Part shown: positions 32,900 to 59,926 of the stretch, piece by piece | How positions within the stretch are numbered: position 1 is the first letter of the stretch | How the letters are laid out: every line of letters begins with the position of its first letter | Assembly: GCA_038087875.1 (NCBI GenBank) | Contig: CM075985.1 | Location: 7,874,001-7,938,000, forward strand | DNA: 64,000 nucleotides | Reading direction: 5' to 3' | Origin: Malacoraja senta | Taxonomy: Eukaryota | Program-made: the position numbers and the translations under genes | Notes under the pieces: model-generated | What the model saw: only the letters and a program-made list of their open reading frames with translations | Told to the model about the DNA's origin: nothing | Database searches by the model: none

Positions 32900-33190
32900 A
32901 GTTTACTTTAGAGATACAGCACGGAAACAAGCCCTTTGGCCCACCGGGTCCGCGGTGTAACACTATCCTACACACACTAGGGGCAATTTTTTTTCACATT
33001 TACCACCAATTAACCTACAAATCTGTATGTCTTTGGAGTGTGGGAGGAAACCGAAGATCTCTGAGTAAACCCACGCAAGTCACGGGGAGATCGTACAAAT
33101 TCCGTACAGTACAGGACCCGTAGTCGGGATCGAACCCGGGTCTCCAGCGCTGCATTTGCTGTAAGGCAGCAACTTTACCACTACACCACC
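32900..33190 (-). mobile_element. tRNA-derived SINE (HE1/V-SINE-like)
   Basis: Reverse copy with gggatcgaacccgggtc (box B) and the conserved central block. Confidence 0.8.
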
Positions 33191-36405: not shown

Positions 36406-37761
36406 AGCCTTGCTTAATCCTTATCTGCACTGTGTCCTGTGTAGGAAGAAACTGCAGATGCTGGTTTAAACTGATGATAGACACAAAAAGCTGGCGTAAC
36501 TCAGCGGGTCAGACAGCATCTCTGGAGAAAAGGAATAGGTGACGTTTCAAGCCGAGACTCTTCTTCAGACTGTCAGGGGAAAGGGAAATTAGTGATATAG
36601 ACGGTGATGTAGAGAGATATAGAATAAATGAATGAAAGATATGCATATACATCACCATTTACATCCCTCGTTTCCTTTTCCTGACTGTCTGAAAAACGGT
36701 CTCCACCCAAAATGTCACCTATTCCTTTTCTCCAGAGATGCTGTCTGACTCACTGAGTTACGCCAGCATTTTGTGTCTATCAACACTGTGTCCTGTTACT
36801 TTGCCTCCAAACCATCTATGGCCATAATAATATGCCTTCATATAGTGCAGTCAGATCATGTCAATTTGATTACAATGATAGATTGAACTCAATCATCAAT
36901 TACAGCCCTATGAAATGTCACACATATTGGACAGAGAAACATTCTTCACATTCACTTGGTCTACCTTGGAACATTTGTTGATTTAACTTCAACCTTTTTG
37001 CACATGTGTTTCTCCTAACAGGTGTTGACAGCACCATCTGTGGCATTAGCTGCTCCACTACACTTAATGCATATTTGCACTTAAGTCTTGTTCTCTAAAA
37101 CCGCAAGCAAAATGCTGCTTCATATTATTTGTAGACTGTCAACATTTATCTCCTGGTTCCAATGGAAACTTTCTCATCCGCGAAGTGCTCCAAGGTAGAC
37201 TAATTGAATGTGAAGACATGTTTGGCAACTTGTTTCTACTGGAAGAAATGCTGAAGGCCACATTGATGGCCAGTGTTGCCACTGCAAAGGCTCTCTGAGA
37301 AAAGGCAACATTACGTGGAATTACCGTCACTGGACACTGATGTGCTAGGCCCTGCATAATTAGCTCCCAAATAGTTGAGAAATGAAGAAAAGACGCATTG
37401 ATAAAATACAATCACCGTAAGAAAACATATAAATATGTTGAATATTGCGTGCTAACAACCCTATATCTTATATTATGTAATTTGCACACTTTATGGGACC
37501 TCCTTATTTGAAAAATACTAGCAGAAATAATTCTGCCAGTATATTAATTTTTCCTAATTAAAAAAAAAAAACATTTACCAAGTCAATTAACATACAAACC
37601 TGTACATCTTTGGAGCGTGGGAGGTAACCGAAGATCTCGGAGAAAACCCATGGTCATGGGGAGAACATACAAACACCGTACAGACAGAACCCGTAGTCGG
37701 GATCGAACCCGGGTCTACGGCGCTACATTCGCTGCGCCACCATGACGTAGAAAATAAACGA

Positions 37762-38146
37762 TTAAGGAAGTTGTTTCAGAGGAAGTGGTGCAGGGGTATG
37801 GAGCTGCAACCCATTCTCCTTGTCTGGAACATCAATCATTGTGGCTTTGTCCTTCTGAAGATATTTGTTAATATTTGCTTTTATCTTTCCTATCCTTACC
37901 CGGGTGTCTAGATCAGGTATGGTACTCTCATCTCCCAGATCTTTCAGAATGGACTTCAATAGTTTGCACAGCCACTTTGTGCCGTAACTCTGCCCAAGGG
38001 AGGGAAGCATTTGAACCTGACTTTCAACTCGGAGTAAGAGGTCTTCATCATCTCTGATTTTAGTGATGATCTTTAGCCCGTGACACAGCTTTTCGACTTG
38101 TTGAATGTTTTTCTGTCCAAGATCATCAAGTTTGTTTGCACATAAA
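37762..38146 (-). CDS. IgV-TM-NLR receptor: terminal exon (last LRR plus about 100-aa tail)
   Basis: Acceptor ttgctttcag|T (phase 2) gives LCANKLDDLG, and the frame stays open to a stop at 37762. Confidence 0.75.
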
Positions 38147-39167
38147 CTGAAAGCAACAAGGCAATGAAAATTAGCAAATGCTTCAATCGTATTTAAATCA
38201 GGAATCAGAAAATTAAATTCCAACCATCTCATTCACTTTATCTTAATAATCATCAAATTCTACAATGAGGAAGTGGCCATTCAGCATCATGACTGTGCAG
38301 ACCTTTAGGGAGCTTTGTACTTGCTCACTCTTTCTACTCTTTCTCTAATCCGTGCAAATGTTTCTTCTTCAAATATTATTATTCCCATTTGAAAATTTGA
38401 ACAAAAGTTCCCTTATATTCTAATTTTCTTTGACTTTCTAAACTATTTACTCATCTAAACTATTTCTAAACCCACATCTCGTTTCTTTTTTTTATTACTC
38501 AATTAAGGGTGCATCCGGTTCCTTCCGAAAGGCGTAATCTTTGCCAGCTAATCTTAGTGCAATGCTAACGGTGATTCAGCCACAGTTTTGAGTTAGAATG
38601 CTCTCTCAATCATTGCTCCTTTATGCTGCTCCTTCACATTGAAACAAAAACATACGGATATGTCTGGAACAGCAGTGTTCCTTGTGTGGTAGAGGGTCCC
38701 ATGGAGACTGGGAAAGAAAAAAAAGCCACATTTATACAAGGAAAGACACAAAATGTTGGAGTAACTCAGCGGGTCAGCATCCCTGGAGAACATGGATATA
38801 TAATGTTACTAGTCGGGACCCTTCTTCAGTTTAATCAGTCTGAATTGATCAATCAGATCAAACTGATCAATCAGATTCATCAAACTTGCAGGTCGGTACC
38901 CTTCTTCAGAAGAATCACTGACCAAAGGGTCTTGTCCCAAAACGCACCTATCCACGTTCTCAAGGAATGCTGCCTGACCCGCTGCATTACTCCAGCTTTT
39001 TGTGTCTTTCCCGGGTAAATTTGCATCTGCCGTGCCTTGTTTCTACATGTTCACATTTACATAATGTGTCTCATACTCAACAACGCCAACATAATTGCAC
39101 ACAAACCAATCCTTGTGAGCATTTATCAAATAAACTGCTTATGCACTCACATCTACCAGCTACTTAC

Positions 39168-39335
39168 AAGAGCTTCTGGAGAGTTTTGTTCAATGTCAGG
39201 TTCTGAATCATGTTCTCTGTGCCTTCATCTGTGATCCCATTGTCATACAGACGAAGGATTTTGAGACTTCTGTTTCTTGCCAGAGCTTTCCAAAGAATCT
39301 GAGCTCCCGCCGAACCAAAAGAGTTTGTACCACTC
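39168..39335 (-). CDS. IgV-TM-NLR receptor: LRR exon with two 28-aa repeats
   Basis: 168 nt, phase 2-2, flanked by gttttcag| and |gtaagt. Encodes NSFGSAGAQILWKALARNRSLKILRLYDNGITDEG, the canonical NLR LRR exon size. Confidence 0.87.
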
Positions 39336-39430
39336 CTGAAAACGGAACCAAATGGCAAATGTCAGGGATTAGAAGCTCTATAGAAACTTGGAGAATTTTA
39401 CAAGAGGATTTTTGTGATGAAAAATCTCAC

Positions 39431-39517
39431 GATAATGTCTCAATCCTGCACTTTGGGTCTTCAAGGACGGCACTCAAATTCTTTGCTGACTTTGCAGTCA
39501 GTTTGTTGGAGCTTATC
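39431..39517 (-). CDS. IgV-TM-NLR receptor: LRR exon (ISSNKLTAKSAKNLSAVLEDPKCRIETL)
   Basis: 87 nt (29 codons), phase 2-2, flanked by tgtttccag| and |gtgaga. This is one ribonuclease-inhibitor-type repeat. Confidence 0.8.
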
Positions 39518-41172
39518 CTGGAAACACAAGACGTTGAAAACAATTAGAGACTTGAGTGCCTGGGGACAGAACACAAGCCTCACAAACTGCTGCCTGCAAA
39601 GGTAGCTGCAAAATAAACAGTTGTGTGCACTGCCGGGAGAGCAGAGTGCCCAACCTTGGTCCAACACGTGTGTCTGGGCAATGATTTTTGAACGATAGTG
39701 CAAATGGGGCTTAAAACGACCAGATAATTACATAGTTTAAGAGATCCTGTGTTTCTGCTTGAGAACTTTCTAACACACAAAATCAATTCAACCTTGTTTA
39801 TAATAATCAATGTTTGGATATTTGGATATACAAGAGACAGCAAACGCTGGAATCTGGAGCAAAAACAAACTGGTGGAGGAACTCAGTGGGTCAAGCAGCA
39901 TCGGTGGAGGCAGACAGACAGTCGATGTTTGCGGTCGAGGATTGAGAGCATAAAGGGGATATGGCCAGGACAGAAGTGAGTGGGAGACCGAGAGGCAGGA
40001 TCTGGCAAATGATAGGTAGAAACAAGGAACTGTAGATGCCGATTTACACAAAACACGGTAGTACACTGTAGTACACTGCAGGTCAGGCAGCTTCTCTGGA
40101 GAACGTAATAGGTGATGTTTCACGTTAGGATTCTTCTTCAAACTGATGATCAGTCTGTAGTGGGGTCCCGACCTGAAACGTCAGCGATCCGTGTTCTCCA
40201 GAGATGCTGCCTGACCCGCTGAGTTGCCCCAGCACTTTGTGTCCTTAAGTAATAGGTGGATCCAGATGAGGAGTGCTGAGATGAACCTGAAGCTGAGGAG
40301 GTGATAATGGGTACAAAGGACTGTAGATTATGGAATCTGATAAGAAATGATAATGGTGAGTGGAACCACATTAGGGTGGGATGGTGGGTAAAAGGGGAAC
40401 AGTGGAGGGAATAGGGAAATCAAGTGCGTGTAATGTGCAAGTGATACACTGATGGAATCATTTGGGATGGGGTAGGGTGATTACAGAAACTGAGAGTAAG
40501 AGGGGTTGGGTTTGTAAAGAAGGGGCATGTGAGACAACCTAGGTATATCAGGAGACAACAAATAGACAGAGGGGTTACGTGACTTCGATGTTCATACCAT
40601 TAGGTTGTAGACCACCCAGGTGAGATGGGAGATGCTGTTCCTCTAGATTCATGAATACCTGTCCATTGACACTGCTGTGTTGGAAATGGGGTGGGGCAAG
40701 ATTTACAGAAAGATCAAACCCCCAACAGGTATATTTGCAGGTAAAGCAAACCGTTCCCAAGTCTTTTTATAGTGATCAATGCAAATGTATTCATAAGAGC
40801 AACAATTAGAATGAATGCATAGAATTAAATCCCTGCCCTTGTGGTTATTACAATGCAGCTCTGTGACTCATTGCAACTCTGTGGCTCTACACGGCAACAT
40901 TGGAGGTGGATAGGGTTATGATAGAACAATGTAGGTGAGGGAGATGATTGCACAAATTGTTTCCATTCTAGTCTTGAAGAGTAGTATCTCCATTTGCATA
41001 TATTTCATTGCAACTTTCAGGCACAAATATTAGCTGGGATAAAATAAATCAGGACATGCAGGGCATAAAATGTGACAAAAGAAAGTATAAAACATGTCGA
41101 CAAACACTGAGCATGCAAGAAGGTAGATTAGTGCAACTGGAGCTTAATATTCTTTTGAAAATCATTACTCAC

Positions 41173-42862
41173 AAAAGAGTTCTGCAATTGACTAGTATTT
41201 CTTGGAGCAGCTTTATTCCTTCATCACCAATGCTACAGTGCCTCAAATCCATCTCCTCCACGGTGGAATGATTGAGACAGTAGCACAAAGCACGCAGATC
41301 GAGTGGGCTCAGAGAAAAGTTGTGAAAATCCACATGTCGGATGCAAGGAGATACTTCAGCCGTTACAGTGGCATCATTCAGTTCAAAGAGACATTGCATC
41401 AAATTCAGCAATTCTGCCTTCTTAATGTCTCGCTGAAGGCTGTTTTTGAACCATGTTGTGAGAGCTCTGGCTGTAGAAGGGGGGAGAGGAGTTGTATAGT
41501 TCCACAACTTGCCATCTCTTCCTGCGGTTAAGAAACCAATGAGAAACCTCAGAAAATTGTACAGGTTCTCTGTGTGATCAGGTTGAAAAGATTGCAAATA
41601 AAATTGGCTCATTTGATTTAGTGGCCTTTTCCCAAAGCACCACAGATCCAGACACTTGACCAATTCTTCAGCTTCATTGTTGAGTAAAGTAGCACAATAC
41701 AAAGCTGCAAATTGTTCCTTCAGCACTGCATGGTGGAACTCAAACACTCCATGGCATTTACAGTCCAGCACAAAATTTGAAAGATATTTTGAAAGGATGT
41801 CTGGGTCTATTTCATAGGTCTTCAGATCAGTCACATTGATTTTAAGTTTCCCTGATAGCAGAGAGTTGAAGGATAGTTCTCCCAGTTTCAGGATGGTGTT
41901 TTTAAACAATTCCTTCTCTGTTTCTTTACACGTGCTGCCGTTAAACAGACTGTACAGCAACAATGTAAAAACTTTGCTATTTGTCACTGGTTCATTTGCA
42001 GGCACTCGTTGAGAGCTGGTACACTTGTCCAAATAATTGCACAGAATGAAGCTGTTGAGGGGATTGGAAGCCAGACATTTGATGGTCGCATTCTCTGTAA
42101 TGAGTTGAAACATTTCTTCTGCCTTTTGCTTCTCTCCATAAAACACCTCACAATATCTTTTCAGCTGATCATTGGTAAAGCCAGAGATAACAAAAAGCTG
42201 ATCAAAGTACTTCTTGTTAAATTCTATCTGCTTGGTATTCCACCGGGAGGTAACCAACACATGGGCTTCTCGAAGGAGGTTCTTGGATATTAGCTTGGAA
42301 ACAAGAACACCTACTTCAGCCTCACTATCCAGATTGAAATCACAGCCTGATGGAATCCATTGCAACTGATGGGCGAATTCATCAAGCCCGTCCAAAATGA
42401 TCAACACATCTTGAGGGTTCGAGAGGAGTTCTGTTAGGACTGATGACAAAGGTGTGCAATGCTTCTTGAGCAGATCCCGGAGAGATGTCTTTCCTTTAAC
42501 CTCATTCAAGTCACGGAATCTGAGAACAAGGACGCACCTCAAGGTGTGGGTTGGTTGAGATGCCCACTCTTGTTCCATGCTGACAACAGTCCAACTTTTC
42601 CCTACTCCTGCATCACCTACCAGCAGGACTCGCTTTGAGAAGTTTTCTTCCTGAAGCAAAGACAGCAGTTGTGAAATTTGTACTTCTTGTGCAGTATTCG
42701 AGTCATCGCTCCTGATAAGATCACCGTCTGGGTCTTGTTCCTTCGGGTTGGTAACATTGATGGTTCTGGCAAGCGAATTATTTGCGAATTGCTTTTGTAT
42801 TAATGAACAACATAAATGAATTTGATCTTTCAAGATGTACTGTTTATAGTTCTGAATGGCAT
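41173..42862 (-). CDS. IgV-TM-NLR receptor: large NACHT exon (NBD, HD1, WHD, HD2, first LRRs)
   Basis: 1690-nt open exon with phase-1 acceptor tttttcttcag|AT and phase-2 donor TT|GTGAGT. Motifs: Walker A GDAGVGKS, Walker B ILDGLDEF, sensor-1 LVTSR, GFTNDQ, NPL, WHD FEFHHAVLKEQFAALY, HD2 FLRFLIG, and LRR MDLRHCSIGDEG. Confidence 0.93.
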
Positions 42863-44275
42863 CTGAAGAAAAAGATACATTTCTCAGAACGAGTAAGTAT
42901 TTTATTATCATGGATTAACAAAATGTGAGAACTGAATATTTCAGAAATGAGCATCATATATCCATCAAGTTGCTGATCCCCTTTAAGAATTCCCACATCG
43001 CTTCAGGTTTAAGTTGTCAGAGTTATGCAGCACAGAAACAGCCCCTTCAGCCCGCCTTGTCCATGCCAATCATCAAGTAACCATCTATACTATTCCATTT
43101 GCCAACTGTTGTTCAGTATGCCCTGGCTAACACAAGTATTAAACTCTTGCAGATTTTCCATTCATCATCTACACCAGCTTTTGGTTGGCACTTTGTTACA
43201 CAGTTCAAAATATCCATATTATGAAAATATTTCACATAACAAAATCTGATGCAGTTTGAAGGTGAACCTGGGATTCCTGGGTGCGTGGGGATGATGCAGA
43301 ATGACGATCCTCCTGCCAGATAATACTCAATGGCTAGATTATGGTCTTCCAGCATGCAACTCCATTGTAGAATGGATCCATGATTTGGAGGGCAGCAAAA
43401 CGGAGTGAGAAACAAGGAACTATCCGTGCACCCAACACTACGGTACCATTCAGGATATATTGGTGGGACTCTAGGTTGGTCAACGTATGATTACACCAAG
43501 CCAAGGGGTGAGGGACACTGATCGAACCATTTACAATGGTATCAAGGTTAACTATGAGGCTGTACAGGGAGTAGGGCAAGCAGTGGAGTATGCTGGCATA
43601 GTGATTAACATCTAGAGGCTTGGACCATTGATCAAGTGACATCAGCCCAAATCCCACCACAGCAGCTGTGGAATTGAAGATTCAAACAATCTCAGTAATG
43701 GTGATGACGAAGTGACAAGACTGCCATAAAAATCCATCTGCATCAATAATTTCAGATATCTGCCATTCTAGCCTGATGTGGCTTAAAAAGTCAAACAGCT
43801 GCTGAATGAGTTGTGAGACTGGATGGGCTTCCTGATACTTTGCTCAAACATATCTGGATTTTATATATATTTTGTATGTTCTTTCTTTCAACATTCATAA
43901 TTATTTAAATGTTTTATACATTCATCGACCACACTCTAAAAACAATTATTTCACACCCTTCTGAAGATTGATTCCATGGCAGATTCCAGTAGTGGACAAG
44001 GAGACCACTTCTACTATTGTGGGCAGAAACTACTGCATGCTAGAGCATAACTTAAGAAAATCTCAATGGAGGTTGGTTCTTTACCTTTTATATTGTCTGC
44101 CAGTAAATGAACATCTGGAAAAAGAAATAGAATAAACCACATGTTAGAGTATGTTCCTCTCAAAGGATGTCATATACACTGTGGCTGAAAGTGCCTAGAA
44201 ATCCTTTCCCAATGGAGTGTTCTGAACACATTCTCGAATAGGTATTCAGTTTGTGTGATTAATGGCCAAAATCTT

Positions 44276-45496
44276 TTTTTACATTTTTTATTTATTAGAA
44301 GTACATTACATTACAACCACATACATTAGTACTCGTCACTTATGTCTTCTTACAATTAATGTACTCCATTTATTTTTTACACTAGAAAAGGAAAAGATTG
44401 AAAGAAAGAAGAAAGTGAAGGAAAAAGTGAGAGTGTAGAAAATGTGACAACAAAAAAGGACGAAGACCCTATAAGAACAAAATTAAAAACAAAAGAAAAA
44501 GAGTTAAGAAATAGACCCTAGAAAAGAAAGAGAAAGAGAAAGAGGAAAAAGAGAGAAACAAATATTTTTATGAGCATTACGCAAATGGGACATACCAACT
44601 CTTCAACTATCATCCCCCCTTACCTGACCTCAATTTTTTTTTTTTTAAAGGTACCTTTGCACCCTATATTTGTAATAATTCTATAAATGCAGACCACGTC
44701 AGGTGGAAGTGCTGGTTTACCTGCTAGGAGGAGTCTTATCTCTTCTAGGTGTAATGTTTCGAACATATTTGAAATCCACATGTTTATAGTTGGTATAGGA
44801 GCCTTCTTCCAAAATTTTAGAATTAGCTTTTTTCCAGTTATTAACCCATAGTCTATTAGTTTCTTTTGAAACACATTTAGTTCTGGACCATCTTCCGTTA
44901 TTCCGAAGAAAATCCATTCTGCTTTGGGTATCAGTCTTTTTTTAAATAACTTTGTAAAGATTTCAAAAATTTAATTCCAAAATTTTTGAATTTTTGTACA
45001 GAAAACGAATGAGTGCGCTATAGTAGCTTCTTGGGATTGACATTTATCACAAATAGATGATACATTTGGGAAAATTTTATGAATTTTAGTTTTCGAATAA
45101 TATAATCTATGTAAAATTTTAAATTGTATTAAAGTGTCTTACATTAATCGAACATTTATGCACGTTTAATGTGTTCATTCCAACTTTCCTTTGAAATTTT
45201 AATAGCTAAGTCTTGTTCCCAGTCTCTTCTGATACCCTCCGTAGATGGTATTTGTACATTTAAGATATTATACAAATATGATATTAAGTTTGCTGATTCA
45301 GCTTTTATCTGCATTGCCTCATCCAATACATCTACTGGGTTATTATAATGATCTTTTGTATATTTTTTCAAATAGTCGCATATTTGAAAATATTTAAAAT
45401 ATTGATTATTTCCGAGTTTATATTTTGTTTGTAATTGTTGAAATGAAAGTAATTTTCCAGTTTCATACAAGTCACCGAGCGTTTTAATTCCTAGTC
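44276..45496 (-). mobile_element. 5'-truncated L1 retrotransposon (ORF2 C-terminus, 3' UTR, poly-A)
   Basis: L1-type peptides LGIKTLGDLY, FKILHRLYY...CDKC...HSF..C and KKLILKFWK. AATAAA and an A-rich tail lie near 44276-44295. A 13-bp TSD TGGCCAAAATCTT sits at 44263-44275 and 45497-45509. Confidence 0.88.
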
Positions 45497-45524
45497 TGGC
45501 CAAAATCTTAAACATTTTACTCAC

Positions 45525-45677
45525 TCTCTTCAATATCTGGTTTCTTCTTGTTTTTCATTTGCCAAAACAAAATTCCAAATGCAATTGAAACAAGTAGCAC
45601 TGGAAGTACGAGTACAAGCTTTTTCCTTTCTGAAGCTGGATCGGTGCCACCGGATGCATTATTCTCTGATGTATCTA
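45525..45677 (-). CDS. IgV-TM-NLR receptor: stalk plus transmembrane exon
   Basis: Phase 1-1, with a tandem TAG-TAG acceptor at 45677/45674 and donor A|GTGAGT. Encodes the 19-residue hydrophobic stretch LVLVLPVLLVSIAFGILFW followed by the basic stop-transfer QMKNKKK. Confidence 0.8.
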
Positions 45678-47704
45678 CTATGTTCAGAACACATAAGAGC
45701 AAATGGTTAGTGTTAAATTAAGAATTGAGCTAAACCACACTTTCAAATCAAGATATATTATAATGTAATTAATTTTATAATTCGCATTAGGGAACAGGAT
45801 TGTGAAAATCTGATTGACCCTTTTTTATTGCAAGTGTAATACTAGTGTAAGTCTTCTGTTTTGAATACAACTTTTTAGAAGCAACAAGTGCTCACACGAT
45901 ACAAACCTGTCACAAATGAACCATGACCATAATCTCCAGATCAACAATGCAGCTATGTGCCTTTGAGTCCTGAAAAGCGCTATATAAATAAAATCTATTA
46001 TGTGCGTTCACATGGGCTAAGCTATGCCTGTCTTTTTGTGGGATATAGGGAGCCGTCACTGTTTTGGGGGCAACTCTGGCACATCCCTCTACTCTTCTTC
46101 TAGTACATCGACGATTATATCAGTGCTGCTTCTTGCACTCAGGCACAACTCAAATGCCTTCCTTTTTGCTTCCAATTTCCAACATCGCTTCTCCTTCTAG
46201 ATCTCTGTCGTCAATTCAGGGGATAGGCTAGCGACAAACTGACATTACAGTCTGAAGAAAAAGGTCTCGATCCGAAACGTCACCTATTTCTTTTCTCCAG
46301 AGTTGCTGCCTGACCCACTGAGTAACTCCAGCTTTTTGTGTCTATCTTCGGTTTAAACCAGCATCTGCAGTTCCTTCCTACACAACAGAGTTCCCTGGAT
46401 CTTTCCTTCTAACCGGTTGTCTCTCCGTTCAATGGATCATCTTTGCAAATTCCAGCAGCTCCAACAAGACTTGACCACCAAACATATATTTTCCTCTGTG
46501 CAGGAAAGAACTGCAGATGCTTGTTTAAATCGAAGGTAGACACAAAATGGAGTAACTCAGCAGGACAGGCAGCATCTCTGGAGAGAAGGAATGGGTGACC
46601 CTTCTTCAGACTGATTTCCTCTCCTCCCTTTTCAGCATTTTGAAGGAATCACTCTGAGTGCAGGCAGAGGGCAGTTATTTTAACCTGACATCATGTTTGG
46701 CGTGGACATTACGGGCCGAATGTCCTGCTCCTGTGCTGCACTGTTTTACATTCTATGTATTTCCCAGGTCCGGTGTTCTGTATTGATCAATCGCTCCCAA
46801 GCTTGGGACACTCTCTCATGCAACCACAGAAGTTGCAAAACCTGCCTTTTCATCTCTTCCCTTCCCACTGTCCAGGGATCCAGTCTTCCCAGATGAGGCA
46901 CTTATTCACTTGCACTTCCAAACCTATCACCAGAAAAGACAAAACACAAATCGGATGGTCCCTTTGCTTCCATAAGCCAGGGCAATGACTGCAAGAGTTG
47001 GAACATCATGTTGGAGCTGTACTAAACACTGCTTACACTGCATTTGGAACACTGAGTGCAGGTCTAGTTGTCACATTACAGGAAGTGTTATTGTAAAAGC
47101 ATTCACAAGATATTCAGCAGCATGTCGCCCAGAATAGTGGACTGTAATTATAATGAGAAATTGGAAAGGCTGGATTTTCACTCACTGGAATGCCAGACGA
47201 CAGGGTACTCTGCCTGTACCAGTTTAAATGGGATATCAATAGGATATAGTCAGAGTGTTTTTCCGCAGGGAGCCAGAACTAGAGGGCACAGGTTTAATGG
47301 AGACACAAGTTGTGACAGACGCTGGAATCTTGATCAAAATACAAAATGCAGGAGAAACTCAACATCTACGGAGGGAAATGGACAGATAAGATTGCGGGTC
47401 GAGACCCGGTTCAAGGTGAGAGGGGAGACTTTTAAAAGAGATCTGATGCAAATATTTTCACACAAGATGATAATATCTGGGATGAGCTTCCAGAGGAGGT
47501 AGTAGAAGGTGATACTATGACAATGTTTGAAAGACATTTGGAAAGGTACTTGGATGGGAAAGACGCAGAATGATACTGGTCGAATGCAGACTAATGGGAT
47601 TGGCAGAGAATGGCATTGGCATGAGATGGCCAAAAGATTCCCTTTCTGTGCTTTACAATTCTATGAAATTTACACAACAAAACATCGTCACAAGATGCAC
47701 TCAC

Positions 47705-48052
47705 CATTTAATTTTAGTTCCACCATGTTCTCAATGAGTGGCATTCCATCATCCACAGTTACAAAGCAAGTGTAGTTACCCACATCAGATAACAACATTC
47801 TATCCAATTTCAGGCTCGCATTCCCTTTGGAGAATTCTGAGAGAAATAGTTGAGTGCGGCCCAGGAATGCTTTGTCCTGAAACTCCGGATGGATTGTTCC
47901 AGAATAGAAACTGTAAACCACGGCGAGACTGTTTGTCCGCTGCCATGTGATGATGAGATTTTTCAGATTGAAGTTGGATGAAGCATGGAAGGCGCTGGGC
48001 AGCAAGATGTCTCTATTTAACAGCCCATAGGATTGAGAGAAAGACCCTTCAG
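47705..48052 (-). CDS. IgV-TM-NLR receptor: B7/butyrophilin-family IgV exon
   Basis: 348 nt, phase 1-1 (ttttcccag|CT ... AAT G|gtgagt). It has IITWQR, FQDKAFLGRTQLFLSEFSKGNASLKL and DVGNYTCFV, which are B7-family V-set hallmarks, plus N-glycan sequons NAS and NYT. Confidence 0.88.
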
Positions 48053-48749
48053 CTGGGAAAATAGAGGAAATGAAAATGCATGCGTTAACTTGCAGATAAA
48101 GTTGGAGTCACCTACCTCCAAACTTCCTGTGCTCCAACCGAGTTCAGTTTAGTTTATTGTCACATGTACCGAGGCACAGTGAAAAACTTTTGTTGCGTGC
48201 TATCCAGTCAATAGAAAGACAATACATGATAACAATTGAGCCATACAGTGTACAGTTTATTTCCAGTGTATTACAGTGCAGTACAAGGGAATAAAGTTTA
48301 GTGCAAGGTAAAGCCAGCAAAGTCCGAACAAGGAAAGTCTGAGAGTCACCAAAGAGGTAGATAGTAGTTCAGCACTGCTCTCTGGCTGTGGTACGCTAAA
48401 GCTTCCAGCATGCCACAAATCCAATCCACTGACATGTTTCCACATCTCTATCACGCTTTACAAGATATTACTTTAGTTATAAAATGAAATGAAGGGAAAA
48501 GGGAATGTTAGGATTGAAATTAAGGTAAAAACAGGAGAATAATGTCACTGGAATAGGCAAATAAGCAATGAAAAAAAATGTGTGTCTTTATTATATTGTT
48601 GAGCAAAGGGATTACTCTTCAATCTTCAATTAGGCAATGAATAAAACAGAAAACTTAATTGCCTCTAAGATCAGATTCATAACTTGTGAGAAGCAGCCAG
48701 CGAGTGGATGACAAATTTACACAATCTCCCCATTGAGATGAACACTCAC

Positions 48750-48804
48750 CCAAGCTAGGGAACAGCAGCAATGACAACAGCATCTTTTCCACTGTAAACT
48801 CCAT
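48750..48804 (-). CDS. IgV-TM-NLR receptor: signal-peptide exon (MEFTVEKMLLSLLLFPSLA)
   Basis: Acceptor ttcaag|GCCATGG gives a near-ideal Kozak context. The leader is hydrophobic, and the phase-1 donor G|GTGAGT matches the IgV exon acceptor. Confidence 0.75.
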
Positions 48805-49149
48805 GGCCTTGAACATTAAAAACAAAACAAGTTATTTTTTTGAGCATCTCCAAATCTTCAGGAACAGTGCCTCGGGAGCGATGGATAACAAACCAAGTTG
48901 ATGCGAAATTTCATCACCGATGTCTGCCTTCATCAGAAGACGGCTCCGAAGAAATAATAAATGGTCCACATCCCCCAGGGTCACAGGGTGGATCTTTATT
49001 GTCAGAGGGCACTGCTGTCGACATGGCTGGGCTAACGCTGGACCCTTGACCTGTGGATTGTGATCCTAAGACCGATGATCTCATGTGCTTCAGTGCATGT
49101 CAATACTCAATGACTTGCATGAGTCATTACCACATGGTAGGCTGCTCTG

Positions 49150-50248
49150 GAAGGTTATATCACATGGGATCCAAGGAGATAGTTGAATGGATAGAAAACT
49201 AGCTTCTTGGAAGGAGCAGAGGGTGATGGTGGAAGGTTGCTTCTTGGACTGGAGGTCTGTGACTAGTGGTGTGCCTCAGGGTTCGGTGTTGGACCCATTA
49301 CTATTTGGTATCTATTTCAATCATTTGCATGAGTATGTACATGGCAAGATTAACAAATTTGCAGATGATACAAAAGTGGGTGGTATTGCAGATAGTGAAA
49401 ATGGTTATCAATAATAGCAGCAGGATCTTGATCAGTTGGCCTGGTGGGCTCAGGAATGGTTGATGGAATTTAATACAGAAAATGTTCAGTTGTTGCATTT
49501 TGGAAAGTCTAATATAGGTCAGACCTACAGGGTGAATGGTCAGGCTCTGTGAATTGTTATAGAGCAGAGGGATCTATAAGTGCAGGTACATAATTCCTTG
49601 AAAGTAGCGTCAAAGTGGTCAAAAAGACTTTTGGCACATTGACCTTCATCAGTCAGAGTATTGAGTATAGAACCTGGGAGGTCATATTGCAATTATATAA
49701 GATGTCAGTGAGACCACATTTAGAGTATTGCATTCAGTCCTGGTCACCGTGTTATAATAATAATAATAATAATAATAATAGATTTTATTTATATAATAAT
49801 AATAGATTTTATTTATATAGCGTTATAGAAAAGATGTTTAGTTGGAAAGGGTGCAGAGAAGATTTACAAGAATGTTGCCAGGACTCGAGAATCTGAGCTG
49901 TTGGGAGAGATTGAGCAGTCTGGGACTCAATTACCTGGAGAGCAGGACGATGAGGAGTGATCCTATAGAGGTGTATACAATCATGAGAGGAATACATCAG
50001 GTGGACACACAGAGATTCTAGCCCAGGGTGGGGGAATCGAGAATCAAAGGGCAGAGTTTTAAGGTGAAGGGGAAAAGATTTTATAGGAATCTGAGGGATA
50101 ACATTTTCAGGCACAGGGTGCTGGGTGTTTGCAACAAGCAGCTGGAGGAAATGGTAGAGGCAGGGATTATAGCAACGTTGAAGGAGCAATTAGATTGGTA
50201 TGTGGATAGGACCGGTTTAGAGGGATATGGGCCAAACGCAGGCAAGTA
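49150..50248 (+). mobile_element. Older degenerate CR1 fragment (duplicated at about 58078-59177)
   Basis: GVPQGSVLDP and KFADDTK motifs with stops and frameshifts. Confidence 0.8.
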
Positions 50249-52285: not shown

Positions 52286-52767
52286 AAGTTAGACTAATCT
52301 AGATGGGACCTGGGCAGGTTGGGCCCACTTGCACACCATATGACTATAATTCTGGTGTATTGGAGTAACTCAGTGGGTCAGGCAGCATTGGTGACATTTC
52401 AGGTTGGGATCCTTCTTCAGACTAACTAGTTATCCATGTTCTCCAGAGATGTGCTCAATCACTCATGTGATAAGAGCAGAATTTGGCCATTCTGCCTATC
52501 AAGTCTACTCCACCATTCAATCATGGCTGATCTGTCTCTCCCTCCGAACCTCAATCTCCTGCCTTCTCCCCATACCCCTTGACACCCGTACTAATCAAGT
52601 ATCTATCTTTGTGTCTAGATCATTAATGCAAGATCATGCTTTCTCTTTTTTTGTAAACCAGTATCTGCATTTCCTTGTCTCAACGACTTGATCTTGAAAC
52701 ACAAGCACACGGAGCCGTCACATGCACACTGCCGCTCAGAGTGGAGGGAAGGAGGTGGTTGGTATCC

Positions 52768-56122: not shown

Positions 56123-56250
56123 AAAGTATTTTGATCGCATTTATCCTCTCCCTTTGGGTTGTCCGGAGCCTGGAACCCTCTTATTAAATCAGCTCGACCA
56201 CTTCGTCCATTCGCAGCAGGGAGCTGTGCGGAAACGAAACCGAAAGGCGC
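56123..56250 (-). promoter_or_regulatory. Candidate promoter/non-coding exon 1 of the IgV-TM-NLR gene, with ISRE
   Basis: Donor |GTGAGT at 56122. GAAACGAAACCGAAAG at 56231-56246 contains GAAA-CC-GAAA, an IRF/ISRE consensus. CpG is locally enriched. Confidence 0.45.
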
Positions 56251-57444
56251 TCTACGACTCCACCTGTATATTTGTAACAAAGGGCTGGGGTCAGGCAGCT
56301 TCTCTGGAGAACATAGTTAGGCGACGTTTCGGTTTGGGACCCTTCTTAAGAAGATTCGTTTATCCATGTTCTCCAGAGATGCTGCATGATCCGCTGAGTT
56401 ACTCCAAAACTCTCGTGTCTCTTTCTCTAGCATCTGCAGTTCCTTATCTTTACACTACTTGCTTTTCTTGTCTGACTAGTTTCAAACAGCCTAACACTCA
56501 AACTTTTTTATAAAATGCGACTCATAGACAAATGTCTGCAGCGGTCGGCGGATCATAGTGCGGATCATTGGGTCACACACACTGTACCAATCCCTGAACA
56601 CAGTGTACTAAGTCGTTAACTCGCTCTCATTGCGGTAGTTTATTGTGTCCGGGCAGTTGAAAACAACATTGTTTGCAGTCAGCCATTTTGCTGCCCCGCC
56701 TATGGAACAGTGTGGAGCCCGAAAGAGAGGATTAAACATGTTTATTTGTATTCGCCATATTAGTTGATACGTTTTGTGAGGACGTATAAGACAATGCCCT
56801 ATGGTGTAAACGGTAGTACAACCAATACTGAGGAACAAATGGACCTAAAGGTCAAATTCCACAATCACCAACGGTAGCAGCACAGGCGTTGACACAAGGA
56901 ACTGCAGATGCTGTTTTACAAAGCAAAATACACAAACTTCTGGAGCAACTCAGCGGGTCGCGGAGTTTGTAGTGTTCTGGTAAACAACACGGCCTCGCTA
57001 AACACCAGTCTGTGGAATCTGTTGCATACTACTATTTAGTTTCATTGCGTCCCCCTTTCCCCACTCGCTCCTTATCCCCCCCTCCCCTCTTGTACCACCC
57101 CTCCCTTGCCCCGTCCCCGCTTCCCCCTCCCCTTGCCCCGTCCCCGCTTCCCCCTCCCCTTGCCCCACCCCCGCTGCCCCGTCCCCTTTCCCTCCCTGCC
57201 CATTGCCGCCCGTCCCGCGCAAATCTTCCTCCCCAAACCCTTGCCCATCGTCCCGCTCCCCCCTTTGCTCCGTCTCCCGCTCACCCTCCTCGCCCTTGAA
57301 ACTGAAAAGTTCGAGTCGTGAATGTGAATGTGAAACCAACAGCAAACTATCAGTTTTATGCCATGTCGACCGAAACACACTCACTAATTATTCGGATCCC
57401 ATTTGTCCTCTCCTTTTGGGTTGTCGGGGAACTAAAAAACCCTC

Positions 57445-59726
57445 AAATTAAGGTAAAAACAGGAGAATAATGTCACTGGAATAGGCAAATAAGCAATGAA
57501 AAAAAAAGTGTGTCTTTATTATATTGTTGAGCAAAGGGATTACTCTTCAATCTTCAATTAGGCAATGAATAAAACAGAAAACTTAATTGCCTCTAAGATC
57601 AGATTCATAACTTGTGAGAAGCAGCCAGCGAGTGGATGACAAATTTACACAATCTCCCCATTGAGATGAACACTCACCCAAGCTAGGGAACAGCAGCAAT
57701 GACAACAGCATCTTTTCCACTGTAAACTCCATGGCCTTGAACATTAAAAACAAAACAAGTTATTTTTTTTGAGCATCTCCAAATCTTCAGGAACAGTGCC
57801 TCGGGAGCGATGGATAACAAACCAAGTTGATGCGAAATTTCATCACCGACGTCTGCCTTCATCAGAAGACGGCTCCGAAGAAATAATAAATGGTCCACAT
57901 CCCCCAGGGTCACAGGGTGGATCTTTATTGTCAGAGGGCACTGCTGTCGACATGGCTGGGCTAACGCTGGACCCTTGACCTGTGGATTGTGATCCTAAGA
58001 CCGATGATCTCATGTGCTTCAGTGCATGTCAATACTCAATGACTTGCATGAGTCAATACCACATGGTAGGCTGCTCTGGAAGGTTATATCACATGGGATC
58101 CAAGGAGATAGTTGAATGGATAGAAAACTAGCTTCTTGGAAGGAGCAGAGGGTGATGGTGGAAGGTTGCTTCTTGGACTGGAGGTCTGTGACTAGTGGTG
58201 TGCCTCAGGGTTCGGTGTTGGACCCATTACTATTTGGTATCTATTTCAATCATTTGCATGAGTATGTACATGGCAAGATTAACAAATTTGCAGATGATAC
58301 AAAAGTGGGTGGTATTGCAGATAGTGAAAATGGTTGTCAATAATAGCAGCAGGATCTTGATCAGTTGGCCTGGTGGGCTCAGGAATGGTTGATGGAATTT
58401 AATACAGAAAATGTTCAGTTGTTGCATTTTGGAAAGTCTAATATAGGTCAGACCTACAGGGTGAATGGTCAGGCTCTGTGAATTGTTATAGAGCAGAGGG
58501 ATCTATAAGTGCAGGTACATAATTCCTTGAAAGTAGCGTCAAAGTGGTCAAAAAGACTTTTGGCACATTGACCTTCATCAGTCAGAGTATTGAGTATAGA
58601 ACCTGGGAGGTCATATTGCAATTATATAAGATGTCAGTGAGACCACATTTAGAGTATTGCATTCAGTCCTGGTCACCGTGTTATAATAATAATAATAATA
58701 ATAATAATAGATTTTATTTATATAATAATAATAGATTTTATTTATATAGCGTTATAGAAAAGATGTTTACTTGGAAAGGGTGCAGAGAAGATTTACAAGA
58801 ATATTGCCAGGACTCGAGAATCTGAGCTGTTGGGAGAGATTGAGCAGTCTGGGACTCAATTACCTGGAGAGCAGGACGATGAGGAGTGATCCTATAGAGG
58901 TGTATACAATCATGAGAGGAATACATCAGGTGGACACACAGAGATTCTAGCCCAGGGTGGGGGAATCGAGAATCAAAGGGCAGAGTTTTAAGGTGAAGGG
59001 GAAAAGATTTTATAGGAATCTGAGGGATAACATTTTCAGGCACAGGGTGCTGGGTGTTTGCAACAAGCAGCTGGAGGAAATGGTAGAGGCAGGGATTATA
59101 GCAACGTTGAAGGAGCAATTAGATTGGTATGTGGATAGGACCGGTTTAGAGGGATATGGGCCAAACGCAGGCAAGTAGTGCATCCGTGGATAACAAGGGA
59201 AATCAGGGATAGTATCAACACAAAAGATGAAGCATACAAATTAGCCAGAAAAAGCAGCCTACCAGAGGACAGGGAGAAATTCAGAGTCCAGCAGAGGAGG
59301 ACAAAGGGCTTAATTAGGAAAGGGAAAATAGATTATGAATGAAAACTGGCAGGGAACATAAAAACTGACTGCAAAAGTTTTTATAGATATGTGAAGAGAA
59401 AGAGATTAGTTAAAACAAATGTAGGTCCCTTGCAGTCAGAAACAGGTGAATTGATCATGGGGAACAAGGACATGGCAGACCAATTGAATAACTACTTTGG
59501 TTCTGTCTTCACTAAGGAAGACATAAATAATCTGCCGGAAATAGCAGGGGACCGCGGGTCAAATGAGATGGAGGAACTGAGTGAAATCCAGGTTAGCCGG
59601 GAAGTGGTGTTAGGTAAATTGAATGGATTAAAGGCCAATAAATCCCCAGGGCCAGATAGGCTGCATCCCAGAGTACTTAAGGAAGTAGACCCAGAAATAG
59701 TGGATGCATTTGTGATCATTTTTCAA
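57445..59726 (+). repeat. Near-identical duplicate of 48517-50797
   Basis: Same unique and repeat sequence at offset 8928-8929 with only a few substitutions. The copy ends exactly at the N gap. Confidence 0.95.
57678..57732 (-). CDS. Duplicate copy of the signal-peptide exon inside the 2.3-kb duplication
   Basis: Same sequence as 48750-48804 (offset 8928). Possibly an assembly false duplication. Confidence 0.4.
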
Positions 59727-59926
59727 NNNNNNNNNNNNNNNNNNNNNNNNNNNNNNNNNNNNNNNNNNNNNNNNNNNNNNNNNNNNNNNNNNNNNNNNNN
59801 NNNNNNNNNNNNNNNNNNNNNNNNNNNNNNNNNNNNNNNNNNNNNNNNNNNNNNNNNNNNNNNNNNNNNNNNNNNNNNNNNNNNNNNNNNNNNNNNNNNN
59901 NNNNNNNNNNNNNNNNNNNNNNNNNN
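59727..59926. other. Assembly gap (200 N)
   Basis: Run of exactly 200 N, so the true gap size is unknown. Confidence 0.99.

What the first reader, a model, noticed from the sequence alone, without database searches (positions are those of the whole stretch)
37762..48804. Membrane-anchored NLR: signal peptide - B7-like IgV - TM - NACHT - LRR in one phase-consistent gene model
Seen in sequence: seven minus-strand exons (48750-48804, 47705-48052, 45525-45677, 41173-42862, 39431-39517, 39168-39335, 37762-38146), all with GT-AG sites. Phases match at every junction (1,1,1,2,2,2) and give a stop-free 961-aa protein. The TM is followed by a basic KNKKK cluster, implying NACHT-LRR in the cytosol, while the IgV with N-glycan sequons lies outside. 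No PYD, CARD, DD or other phase-1 exon was found between the TM exon and the NACHT acceptor. Established: vertebrate NLRs are cytosolic proteins with death-fold, BIR or similar N-termini, and B7/butyrophilin IgV receptors carry short tails or B30.2. Inference: this is an exon-shuffled cell-surface receptor in which extracellular ligand binding or clustering could drive NACHT oligomerisation. I do not know of this architecture being described in vertebrates.
Basis: partly seen in the sequence, partly recalled or inferred. Interest (0 to 1): 0.96.

Follow-up and report, generated by a model that had tools for sequence, protein, structure and literature searches.

The report
Membrane-anchored NLR gene of a skate
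This skate gene really does join a B7-H3-like surface immunoglobulin domain and a membrane anchor to a NOD2-like intracellular immune switch; the same gene is present from sharks to amphibians, and I found no paper describing it in vertebrates, where NLRs are taken to be soluble cytosolic proteins.

Summary
All seven minus-strand exons have AG/GT sites and splice into a stop-free 961-codon frame. The model needs three corrections:
- It misses a 30-nt phase-1 microexon (44085-44114).
- It misses two 5' exons.
- It misses an alternative terminal exon (43831 to about 42900) that gives a 208-aa IgV-TM-only isoform.

A spliced 3.3-kb transcript contig, 99% identical in protein to the little skate RefSeq protein, joins every exon, including microexon to NACHT. 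The sawfish genome has the same eight coding exons and phases.

Proteins with V-set + TM + NACHT + LRR are predicted in 15 cartilaginous fishes and nine amphibians. They carry generic names such as 'NLRC3-like' or 'NLRP1 homolog'. They form one clade (support 100) whose sister clade lacks both TM and Ig.

The IgV is closest to CD276/B7-H3, and the NACHT-LRR is closest to NOD2. The ATPase motifs are intact.

Eight literature searches found no vertebrate description. The closest published analogue is sea-cucumber AjNLRC4.

Function is untested. I favour a membrane-tethered NOD-type switch whose oligomerisation clusters the B7-like ectodomain.

Verdict: real, conserved, apparently undescribed, a new variant of a known kind.

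The parts
57385..57449 (-). 5' non-coding exon A. The 3' end at 57385 has a GT donor. The 5' end is not defined here.
   Evidence: The 5'UTR of three related-skate transcript contigs (L001, L003, L004) aligns here at 83%. Donor checked. It abuts the boundary of a 99.65% duplicated block.
56123..56263 (-).
   Evidence: AG acceptor and GT donor. Aligns to the transcripts at 80-86%. RefSeq skate proteins start MRSKYFAM.
48750..48807 (-).
   Evidence: Short hydrophobic core MLLSLLLFPSL followed by AEG. A 99.65% copy lies at about 57675-57735.
47705..48052 (-). IgV exon, phase 1-1, CD276/B7-H3-like V-set domain.
   Evidence: PDB phmmer: CD276 domain E 1.4e-11, VTCN1 5.7e-12. AF2 beta-sandwich with pLDDT 81-90. 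dN/dS 0.41 against the little-skate-like transcript.
45525..45677 (-). Stalk, transmembrane helix and basic stop-transfer cluster, phase 1-1.
   Evidence: KD window score 2.75 for LVLVLPVLLVSIAFGILFW, then QMKNKKKP. A TM followed by a K/R cluster is conserved in every full-length orthologue checked.
44085..44114 (-). It is a conserved juxtamembrane motif.
   Evidence: Present in L001, L003 and L004. AG/GT confirmed. The same exon is in the Pristis genome. A '..LL..' motif is conserved through to amphibians.
42901..43831 (-). Alternative terminal exon of the short isoform: GSPSSLTTHSAAV, stop, then 3'UTR with AATAAA at 42906-42901.
   Evidence: L004 and L003 (two different SRA runs) splice from the microexon to here, with 91-93% identity down to 42951. 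The window has an AG before 43831 and reads a 208-aa product. The Logan cluster has 5 members on 8 contigs.
41173..42862 (-). Large exon: pre-NACHT linker, NACHT NBD, HD1, WHD, HD2 and the first LRR.
   Evidence: Walker A GDAGVGKSW, Walker B LIILDGLDE, and invariant G/G/K/S and D/D columns. Best PDB match is NOD2, E 2.8e-30. Foldseek NOD2 E 2.6e-31.
39431..39517 (-). LRR exon.
   Evidence: The AF2 model shows an alternating strand/helix pattern across residues 716-882.
39168..39335 (-). LRR exon.
   Evidence: The C-terminal region matches ribonuclease-inhibitor and NLRX1 LRRs in PDB.
37688..38146 (-). Last exon: final LRR, a conserved C-terminal helical domain, stop at 37762-37764, and 3'UTR to at least 37688.
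   Evidence: C-terminal helices at 889-956 have pLDDT 85-90. This region aligns from skates to most amphibians, and a similar tail motif is visible by eye in the sister clade.

Best explanation
SHOWN. Window 37.7-57.4 kb (minus strand) holds one intact gene of a rajid skate.
- The domain order is signal peptide, one CD276/B7-H3-like IgV, a short stalk, a TM helix with a basic stop-transfer cluster, a conserved juxtamembrane microexon, a NOD2-like NACHT-WHD-HD2 module with intact Walker A/B motifs, about five to six LRRs, and a conserved C-terminal helical domain.
- A second mRNA ends in an alternative exon just upstream of the NACHT exon and encodes only signal peptide, IgV, TM and a short tail (208 aa).
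- The gene belongs to a low-copy family found in cartilaginous fishes, coelacanth (partial models) and amphibians.
- That family is one clade, and its sister clade lacks both Ig and TM.

INFERRED topology. The IgV is outside the cell or in a lumen. The NACHT-LRR is in the cytosol.

INFERRED mechanism, to which I commit at about 40%.
- The cytosolic NACHT-LRR is still the regulated sensor and switch, as in NOD1/NOD2.
- The IgV-TM module sits where NLRs carry their effector domain.
- ATP-driven NACHT oligomerisation under the membrane would therefore cluster the ectodomains into a multivalent B7-like array that another cell can read. This is inside-out signalling, as butyrophilin BTN3A1 does with its cytosolic B30.2 sensor.
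- The short isoform would supply the same ectodomain uncoupled from the switch.

The stated confidence covers the shown and topological parts. The direction of signalling is much less certain.
For: Gene model:
- AG/GT sites and consistent phases at every junction.
- Spliced transcript L001 has an uninterrupted ORF 267-3215 and breaks at the window's exon ends at 87-97% identity. Its protein is 99.1% identical to a Leucoraja erinacea RefSeq protein.
- The Pristis locus L002 has an identical eight-exon structure.

Domains:
- IgV matches CD276 and VTCN1.
- NACHT-LRR matches NOD2 by sequence and by fold (AF2 pLDDT 73.9).
- TM plus K/R cluster is conserved in all full-length orthologues checked.
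- Walker A/B, the WHD His and other columns are invariant across 18 sequences.

Selection:
- dN/dS is 0.41 for the IgV, 0.50 for the NACHT exon and 0.58 overall, against the little-skate-like transcript.
- Skate-to-amphibian identity is 33-39% for the IgV, 26-39% for the NBD and 35-42% for the LRR.

Distribution and single origin: and the tree (IgV-TM clade SH-aLRT 100; sister clade without TM, support 98).

Short isoform.

For the inside-out reading, the support is inference only:
- Retention of a conserved LRR and a competent ATPase argues that the cytosolic part still senses something.
- The sea-cucumber receptor that senses through its Ig domains has lost the LRR (PMC8699970).
- The N-terminal position is the position of NLR effector domains (established NLR knowledge).
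Against: - No protein-level, localisation or functional data exist for any member, as far as I could find.
- Signal peptide and topology were judged from hydropathy, charge and an AF2 helix only. No SignalP or DeepTMHMM was available.
- Long-form transcript evidence in skates is one assembled contig from one run, plus automated RefSeq models. The short isoform was assembled more often (8 contigs against 1), so the long form may be the minor product.
- This window and Amblyraja lack the first canonical Ig cysteine.
- dN/dS of about 0.6 between skates is only moderate constraint, and the TM exon gives 1.17 on very few sites.
- No known output domain sits on the cytosolic side.
- The only experimentally studied Ig-TM-NACHT protein signals outside-in.
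- A single V domain with a large cytoplasmic part also resembles a receptor.
- RefSeq lists isoforms without the TM exon (Stegostoma X2) or without the IgV (Pristis paralogue, Rhinatrema X2).
Confidence: 0.8

Rival explanations
1. Outside-in receptor. The IgV binds an extracellular ligand, microbial or host. Clustering brings the NACHT domains together, and the oligomer recruits cytosolic partners through the juxtamembrane helix, NACHT surfaces or the C-terminal helical domain.
For: - Sea-cucumber AjNLRC4 (extracellular Ig, TM, cytosolic NACHT) is reported to bind bacteria through its Ig domains, oligomerise and drive actin-dependent phagocytosis (PMC8699970; PMC13133943).
- A single V domain plus TM plus a large cytoplasmic part is the layout of many IgSF receptors (established knowledge).
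- The conserved C-terminal helical domain could be an output module.
- The short isoform would make a natural decoy.
Against: - No recognisable signalling domain (CARD, PYD, DD, TIR, ITAM/ITIM) was found on the cytosolic side.
- The LRR is retained and well conserved, which would be unnecessary if sensing were extracellular.
- AjNLRC4 is not shown to be related beyond the NACHT domain. It differs in having two Ig domains, two TM helices and no LRR.
Confidence: 0.3
2. Anchor-only model. The IgV-TM module mainly places a NOD-type cytosolic sensor permanently at a particular membrane (plasma membrane, endosome or phagosome). There it senses ligands that cross or damage that membrane. The IgV serves trafficking or stability and is not a signalling surface.
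For: - NOD1/NOD2 need membrane recruitment to signal (established knowledge).
- NOD2 is the nearest solved structure.
- The Pristis paralogue P0009 and Rhinatrema isoform X2 keep the TM and the juxtamembrane motif but have no IgV.
Against: - The IgV is conserved as well as the NBD over the skate-amphibian distance.
- It keeps B7-type surface sequence features and N-glycan sequons. That is more constraint than an anchor would need.
- An effector for the cytosolic part is still missing.
Confidence: 0.15
3. Two functional units. The real products are the short IgV-TM protein and a separate NACHT-LRR protein made from an internal start. The long mRNA is a rare read-through or splice variant without a function of its own, propagated by automatic annotation.
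For: - Short-isoform contigs are more numerous than the long one.
- A poly(A) signal lies 44 nt before the NACHT exon.
- V-only relatives exist as stand-alone genes in lungfish, a frog and alligators.
- The alligator gene has no NACHT within 10 kb downstream.
Against: - The junction is present in assembled RNA.
- Phase compatibility of four successive phase-1 exons with the NACHT acceptor is kept in skate and sawfish.
- IgV, TM and NACHT stay in one model across 15 chondrichthyan and nine amphibian species over more than 400 My (my estimate), and the tree mirrors the species tree.
- No ATG-initiated conserved N-terminus for a NACHT-only product was seen. The 580-aa ORF's upstream ATG sits in the polypyrimidine tract of the acceptor.
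Confidence: 0.05
4. In this species the copy is decaying: a unitary pseudogene in the making, or a relaxed paralogue.
For: - Cys to Ser at the first Ig cysteine.
- dN/dS 0.58 overall, and above 1 for the signal-peptide and TM exons on few sites.
- Small in-frame indels in the NACHT exon relative to the little-skate-like transcript.
Against: - 971-978 codons have no stop or frameshift, and all 16 or more splice sites are intact.
- ATPase motifs are intact.
- The same Cys to Ser change is in the Amblyraja radiata RefSeq protein, so it is an inherited lineage state.
- IgV and NACHT have dN/dS of 0.4-0.5.
Confidence: 0.04

Closest known systems
NOD2 / NOD1 (NLRC-type NLRs)
   Same: The NACHT-WHD-HD2-LRR module is shared. 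Rabbit NOD2 is the best solved-structure match by sequence (E 2.8e-30) and by fold (Foldseek E 2.6e-31, TM 0.62-0.65). Walker A/B motifs and the WHD His are present. Both act at membranes, although for NOD1/2 this is by recruitment (established knowledge).
   Different: NOD1/2 carry N-terminal CARDs and are soluble proteins. Here the N-terminus is a signal peptide, an IgV and a TM helix, and no death-fold domain is present. The LRR is much shorter (about 5-6 repeats), and a C-terminal helical domain is added. Identity is only about 20%.
CD276 (B7-H3) and VTCN1 (B7-H4) IgV domains
   Same: These are the best matches to the IgV exon (domain E about 1e-11), including the WQ...VHSF...GRT.LF...GNASL.L...D.G.Y.C pattern. 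The exon is phase 1-1, as is usual for IgSF exons.
   Different: B7 proteins have IgV-IgC (or 4Ig) ectodomains and short cytoplasmic tails. Here a single V domain is followed by about 790 cytosolic residues of NLR. The first Ig cysteine is lost in this skate.
Apostichopus japonicus AjNLRC4 (echinoderm Ig-TM-NACHT receptor; PMC8699970, PMC13133943)
   Same: This is the only published protein I found with an extracellular Ig, a TM and a cytosolic NACHT. It is reported at the cell membrane and is reported to oligomerise.
   Different: It has two Ig domains, two TM helices and no LRR. It is an invertebrate protein. The vertebrate family's sister clade lacks Ig and TM, so the architectures most likely arose independently (inference). 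The AjNLRC4 sequence was not compared here.
Butyrophilins (BTN3A1/BTN2A1: IgV-IgC-TM-B30.2)
   Same: A B7-family ectodomain is fused through one TM helix to a cytosolic sensing domain. BTN IgVs are also among the PDB hits. This is the precedent for inside-out signalling (established knowledge).
   Different: The cytosolic domain there is B30.2/SPRY, with no STAND ATPase and no oligomerising switch. The ectodomain has two Ig domains.
Sister vertebrate NLR clade (teleost and Xenopus proteins named 'NLRC3-like', about 940-950 aa)
   Same: Identity across NACHT-LRR is 31-36%. The short LRR is shared, and a similar C-terminal helical tail motif is visible by eye.
   Different: These have no signal peptide, Ig or TM. 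Instead they have an N-terminal region of about 230 aa with no Pfam or PDB match on record. It looks death-fold-like by eye, but that was not tested.

Membership tests
NLR (NACHT-LRR STAND ATPases) | NACHT NTPase with Walker A GxxxxGK[ST] and Walker B hhhhDGhDE | tested here: met
   GDAGVGKSW and LIILDGLDE are present in the window. The G, G, K, S and D, D columns are invariant in 18 family members. Pfam PF05729 is recorded on the orthologues.
NLR (NACHT-LRR STAND ATPases) | Helical and winged-helix domains after the NBD, with the overall NLR fold | tested here: met
   PF17776 is recorded. The AF2 model of the 89-91% identical orthologue matches NOD2, NLRP3, NLRP9 and NLRC4 (Foldseek E 1e-31 to 1e-20).
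NLR (NACHT-LRR STAND ATPases) | C-terminal ribonuclease-inhibitor-type LRRs | tested here: met
   phmmer hits to NLRX1 LRR, LRRC34 and ribonuclease inhibitor over residues 686-880. PF13516 is recorded on several orthologues. AF2 shows a strand/helix alternation over 716-882.
NLRC / NLRP subfamilies | N-terminal death-fold effector domain (CARD or PYD) | tested here: not met
   No CARD or PYD Pfam hit on any family member. No PDB death-fold hit. No remnant exon in 42863-57800. The RefSeq names 'NLRC3-like', 'NLRP1 homolog' and 'NOD1-like' are therefore labels, not memberships.
Vertebrate NLRs as soluble cytosolic proteins | No signal peptide and no transmembrane segment | tested here: not met
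   One strong hydrophobic segment (KD 2.75) followed by a K/R cluster, plus an N-terminal signal-like h-region, conserved in all full-length orthologues checked. Experimental localisation cannot be tested with these tools.
B7 / butyrophilin IgV (V-set) | V-set fold and sequence similarity to B7 IgV | tested here: met
   CD276 domain E 1.4e-11, VTCN1 5.7e-12, then MOG, PD-L1 and BTN3A. PF07686 is recorded on the orthologues. AF2 beta-sandwich over residues 28-140 with pLDDT 81-90.
B7 / butyrophilin IgV (V-set) | Canonical intradomain Cys-Cys pair with the core Trp | tested here: inconclusive
   The Trp (ITWQR) and the second Cys (YTCF) are present. The first Cys is Ser in this window and in Amblyraja, but Cys in all the other aligned orthologues that carry the IgV.
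B7 family proper | IgV-IgC ectodomain and a short cytoplasmic tail | tested here: not met
   There is a single V domain and no IgC exon between 47705 and 45677. The cytoplasmic part of the long form is about 790 aa. The short isoform does have a short tail.
Echinoderm AjNLRC4-type membrane NLR | Extracellular Ig, TM, cytosolic NACHT | tested here: met
   Met at the level of predicted architecture only.
Echinoderm AjNLRC4-type membrane NLR | Two Ig domains, two TM helices, no LRR; common descent with the echinoderm gene | tested here: not met
   The skate protein has one Ig, one TM and LRRs. Descent was not tested directly because the AjNLRC4 sequence was not at hand. The sister clade without Ig or TM argues for independent origin.

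The most novel reading that the evidence does not exclude
Jawed vertebrates ancestrally had a true transmembrane NLR. It physically links a B7-H3-like cell-surface domain to a NOD-type ATP-driven oligomerisation switch. It survives in cartilaginous fishes, coelacanth and amphibians, and was not seen in my searches among teleosts or amniotes. It would connect cytosolic innate sensing directly to cell-cell recognition in one direction or the other, with a splice-regulated uncoupled short form. On this reading it is a vertebrate immune receptor class that has not been described.
Probability: 0.55. Interest if true: 0.85.

Novelty: new variant of a known kind. Interest (0 to 1): 0.77.

Why it matters
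- Textbook vertebrate NLRs are soluble cytosolic sensors whose N-terminal death-fold domains nucleate signalling.
- A conserved family in which that position is taken by a signal peptide, a B7-H3-like IgV and a membrane anchor breaks the rule. It has done so for as long as sharks and tetrapods have been separate.
- It offers a natural experiment on how NACHT oligomerisation can be coupled across a membrane.
- It may hint at what B7-H3-type domains bind. The receptor of B7-H3 itself is still unknown, to my knowledge.
- It is experimentally tractable, because amphibians that can be bred and gene-edited (Pleurodeles, and possibly the axolotl, whose models are partial) carry orthologues. No family member from Xenopus was found; the only Xenopus hit belongs to the sister clade.
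- It also shows that generic automated names ('NLRC3-like', 'NLRP1 homolog', 'NOD1-like') are hiding a distinct family in public annotation.

Tried and rejected
- The bacterial promoter/terminator scan of the 3' end and ARAGORN on the 3'UTR were uninformative for a eukaryotic gene.
- The look-up of encoding contigs had no record for the Heptranchias and Ascaphus proteins, so Pristis was used instead.
- The word-based search restricted to residues 20-215 found only five proteins, too insensitive to map the IgV's distribution.
- The all-library HMMER search with the IgV exon is dominated by multi-V proteins whose repeats add up. Only its single-V hits were useful.
- The PDB search of the 727-aa ORF at 53013-55196 found nothing. 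I identified it by eye from its motifs as a Penelope-like element.
- A search for the SRA run numbers in papers gave nothing relevant, so tissue of origin is unknown.
- I first labelled the sister clade 'CARD-type' from the look of its N-terminus. Neither Pfam records nor a PDB search supports that, so the label is withdrawn.
- The idea that Cys to Ser is a sequencing error is rejected, because Amblyraja shares the change.
- The idea that the window comes from Leucoraja or Amblyraja is rejected. Identity to both is only 89%, so it is another rajid.
- I did not try to read or fill the N run at 59727-59926.

Full report

Yes. Reading the seven stated intervals on the minus strand gives AG before and GT after every internal exon. 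The entry phases are 0,1,1,1,2,2,2. The spliced CDS is 2886 nt, which translates to 961 residues and a terminal stop with no internal stop. The large exon is by itself a 580-aa ORF. By my arithmetic a random stop-free run of this length has a probability of about 5e-21.

A hydropathy scan finds a single strong TM segment followed by QMKNKKKP. The IgV carries NAS and NYT sequons.

**2. Corrections to the model**

A Logan transcript contig, L001 (SRR11241622, 3341 nt), carries one uninterrupted ORF of 982 aa. That protein is 99.1% identical to Leucoraja erinacea XP_055509288.

It also shows one more piece, at 44116-44085. In the window this is a 30-nt exon at 44085-44114 with AG and GT. It is phase 1-1 and reads NVHLLADNIK.

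Three related-skate contigs share two 5' exons that map to about 57449-57385 and to 56123-56263. Both have proper splice sites. The second holds an in-frame ATG that adds MRSKYFA, which is the start used by the skate RefSeq proteins.

**3. A second product**

An all-library HMMER search with the IgV exon turned up a 214-aa protein that is 90% identical. It represents five Logan sequences on eight contigs.

Two of these contigs come from two further runs (L003 and L004). They splice exons 1-4 to an alternative terminal exon that maps to window 43833-42951. That lies inside the intron just upstream of the NACHT exon.

The window keeps this exon. It has an AG before 43831, reads GSPSSLTTHSAAV then a stop, and has AATAAA at 42906-42901. 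The product is a 208-aa signal peptide, IgV, TM and short tail.

The locus therefore makes both a long membrane NLR and a short B7-like protein. That condition is not met, but independent termination does occur.

**4. Independent support for the fused architecture**

- **Gene structure.** The Pristis pectinata genomic locus (L002) has the same eight coding exons, microexon included, with the same boundaries and phases.
- **Distribution.** The NACHT-exon search, a search from the caecilian relative, the region search and cluster look-ups give proteins of 900-1020 aa.
  - These proteins have both Pfam V-set and NACHT on record in three named rajids besides this one (Leucoraja, Amblyraja, Rhinoraja).
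  - They also occur in five other batoids (Pristis, Narcine, Hemitrygon, Hypanus, Mobula).
  - They occur in five sharks (Heterodontus, Mustelus, Stegostoma, Chiloscyllium, Heptranchias). A 993-aa Scyliorhinus protein with the IgV at residues 19-132, named 'NOD1-like', also belongs here, although its NACHT was not checked.
  - They occur in nine amphibians (Ascaphus, Mantella, Gastrophryne, Bufo, Leptodactylus, Engystomops, Pyxicephalus, Lissotriton, Pleurodeles).
  - TM-only or partial models exist in Rhinatrema, Ambystoma and Latimeria.
- **Alignment.** An 18-sequence alignment shows the IgV core, the TM, the basic cluster, the juxtamembrane '..LL..' motif, the ATPase motifs, the LRRs and the C-terminal helices aligned from skates to frogs.
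- **Tree.** A maximum-likelihood tree of 41 NLRs puts all of these in one clade (SH-aLRT 100). The clade splits into a chondrichthyan half and a sarcopterygian half. Its sister (support 98) is a teleost and Xenopus clade that has no signal peptide, Ig or TM.

The simplest reading is a single acquisition of the IgV-TM module before cartilaginous and bony vertebrates diverged.

**5. What the parts are**

- **IgV.** It is closest to CD276/B7-H3 (domain E 1.4e-11) and VTCN1/B7-H4, then MOG, PD-L1 and BTN3A.
- **NACHT-LRR.** It is closest to NOD2 by sequence (2.8e-30).
- **Model.** An AlphaFold2 model of the orthologue, built on the family alignment, has pLDDT 73.9 and pTM 0.65.
  - It gives a confident beta-sandwich (28-140), a helix at the TM (164-182) and a juxtamembrane helix (189-216).
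  - It also gives the NACHT, an LRR arc (716-882) and a confident C-terminal helical bundle (889-956).
- **Fold search.** The best matches to that model are NOD2, then NLRP14, NLRP9 and NLRP3.
- **No death fold.** No death-fold domain is present in the protein or in the introns and upstream DNA.

**6. Constraint**

Against the little-skate-like transcript, Nei-Gojobori dN/dS is 0.41 for the IgV, 0.50 for the NACHT exon, 0.59 for the LRR exons and 0.58 overall, at dS 0.08. The tiny signal-peptide and TM exons exceed 1 on a handful of sites.

Over the skate-amphibian distance the IgV keeps 33-39% identity. That is the same range as the NBD (26-39%) and the LRR (35-42%). The stalk, TM and linker keep only 5-21%. 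The ectodomain and the ATPase have thus been conserved together.

The first Ig cysteine is Ser in this window (AGC) and in Amblyraja. It is therefore a lineage state and not an error.

**7. Mechanism**

Nothing here tests function. The shown facts are the architecture, its conservation, intact ATPase motifs, a retained LRR, the lack of any known cytosolic output domain, and a splice-regulated short form.

I favour, at about 40%, the following reading. The cytosolic NACHT-LRR remains the regulated sensor. The N-terminal IgV-TM module sits in the effector position. NACHT oligomerisation therefore clusters the ectodomain into a multivalent B7-like array read by another cell. BTN3A1 is the precedent for a B7-type protein that signals inside-out from a cytosolic sensor domain.

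Its precedent is sea-cucumber AjNLRC4 (PMC8699970, PMC13133943). That protein, however, has lost the LRR.

An anchor-only model gets about 15%. It draws on the membrane dependence of NOD1/2 and on TM-only paralogues and isoforms.

The remaining rivals are unlikely, given. One is that there are two separate products and the long mRNA is noise. The other is that the gene is decaying in this species.

**8. Known or new?**

Eight full-text searches found no description of a vertebrate NLR with an Ig ectodomain or a TM helix.

- The whale-shark genome paper catalogues NLRs without mentioning one (PMC8455134).
- Published membrane NLRs are multi-pass anthozoan proteins (PMC3879445) and the sea-cucumber receptors.
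- The library lacks most subscription journals, so a description elsewhere cannot be excluded.
- The gene models themselves are public, under names such as 'protein NLRC3-like' (XP_032878279, XP_055509288), 'NLRP1 homolog', 'NLRP5-like' and 'NOD1-like'.

I rate it a new variant of a known kind. It is a bona fide NLR by every core criterion. It fails the death-fold and soluble-cytosolic features of the named vertebrate subfamilies. It converges in architecture with an echinoderm receptor.

**9. Limits**

- Long-form RNA evidence in skates is one assembled contig plus automated models.
- Tissue, abundance, protein, localisation and ligand are all unknown.
- The window's species is not identified beyond 'a rajid skate' (89% identity to both Leucoraja and Amblyraja proteins).
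- Absence from teleosts and amniotes rests only on not seeing them among hits.
- An alligator V-only relative (52% identical IgV) has no NACHT within 10 kb downstream.

Noticed in passing
window 48517-50797 and 57445-59726: A 2282-bp block is present twice at 99.65% identity. It contains the signal-peptide exon and about 2 kb upstream of it. The upstream copy ends exactly at the N run 59727-59926, so it is either an uncollapsed assembly duplicate or a very recent tandem duplication. The second exon-1 copy (about 57675-57735) sits just upstream of 5' exon A.
   Followed up: partly
window 53013-55196 (-): A 727-aa ORF with a reverse-transcriptase core (YIDD) and a C-terminal GIY-YIG-type motif. 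By these motifs it is a Penelope-like retroelement lying in the first long intron of the gene. It has no PDB sequence match.
   Followed up: partly
window 18000-20000: An extremely C-rich block (GC 0.66, GC skew -0.70) of degenerate tandem units of 93-116 bp. It produces long spurious ORFs on both strands.
   Followed up: no
window 35260-36230 (+): Two adjacent ORFs (248 and 86 aa) that read like a Tc1/mariner transposase split by a frameshift or stop, just downstream of the gene's 3' end.
   Followed up: no
window 50462-51947 (+), also 49187-50250 and 59391-60128: Reverse-transcriptase ORFs (FADDTK motif) of LINE-type elements in the intron upstream of the signal-peptide exon. One of them is part of the duplicated block.
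   Followed up: no
window about 37650-37745 (-), with copies at 33116-33193 and 116-181: The 3'UTR just after the stop codon contains a repeat with a tRNA-like B box (GGTTCGATCCC), probably a tRNA-derived SINE. It is also present in the 3'UTR of the related transcript L001. ARAGORN calls no tRNA there.
   Followed up: partly
L005 (Alligator mississippiensis AKHW03002440.1) 10001-14151; proteins P0256, P0225, P0251, P0252: Stand-alone V-only genes occur in alligators (155-166 aa), African lungfish (207-223 aa) and Ascaphus (213-233 aa). Each has a signal peptide and an IgV. The alligator and lungfish proteins also have a hydrophobic C-terminal segment, but the Ascaphus isoform examined (P0252) shows no obvious one. 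RefSeq names them 'CD276 antigen-like' or 'MOG-like'. Their IgV is 45-52% identical to this skate IgV, closer than the amphibian NLR IgVs are. No NACHT lies within 10 kb downstream in the alligator. They could be remnants of the family or the donor lineage.
   Followed up: partly
proteins P0010 (Stegostoma X2), P0123 (Mantella), P0009 (Pristis paralogue), P0013 (Rhinatrema X2), P0007 (Heterodontus X2): RefSeq isoforms or paralogues of the family lack individual modules. Some have no TM exon, so the IgV joins directly to the NACHT. Some have no IgV but keep the TM. One is truncated after the NACHT exon. If real, the family uses exon choice to vary topology. They may also be prediction artefacts.
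   Followed up: no
Amblyraja radiata proteins P0136-P0141: The thorny skate has two loci of this gene on different chromosomes (records of 104.9 Mb and 44.0 Mb) whose products are 98% identical. This is either a recent duplication or an assembly duplicate.
   Followed up: no
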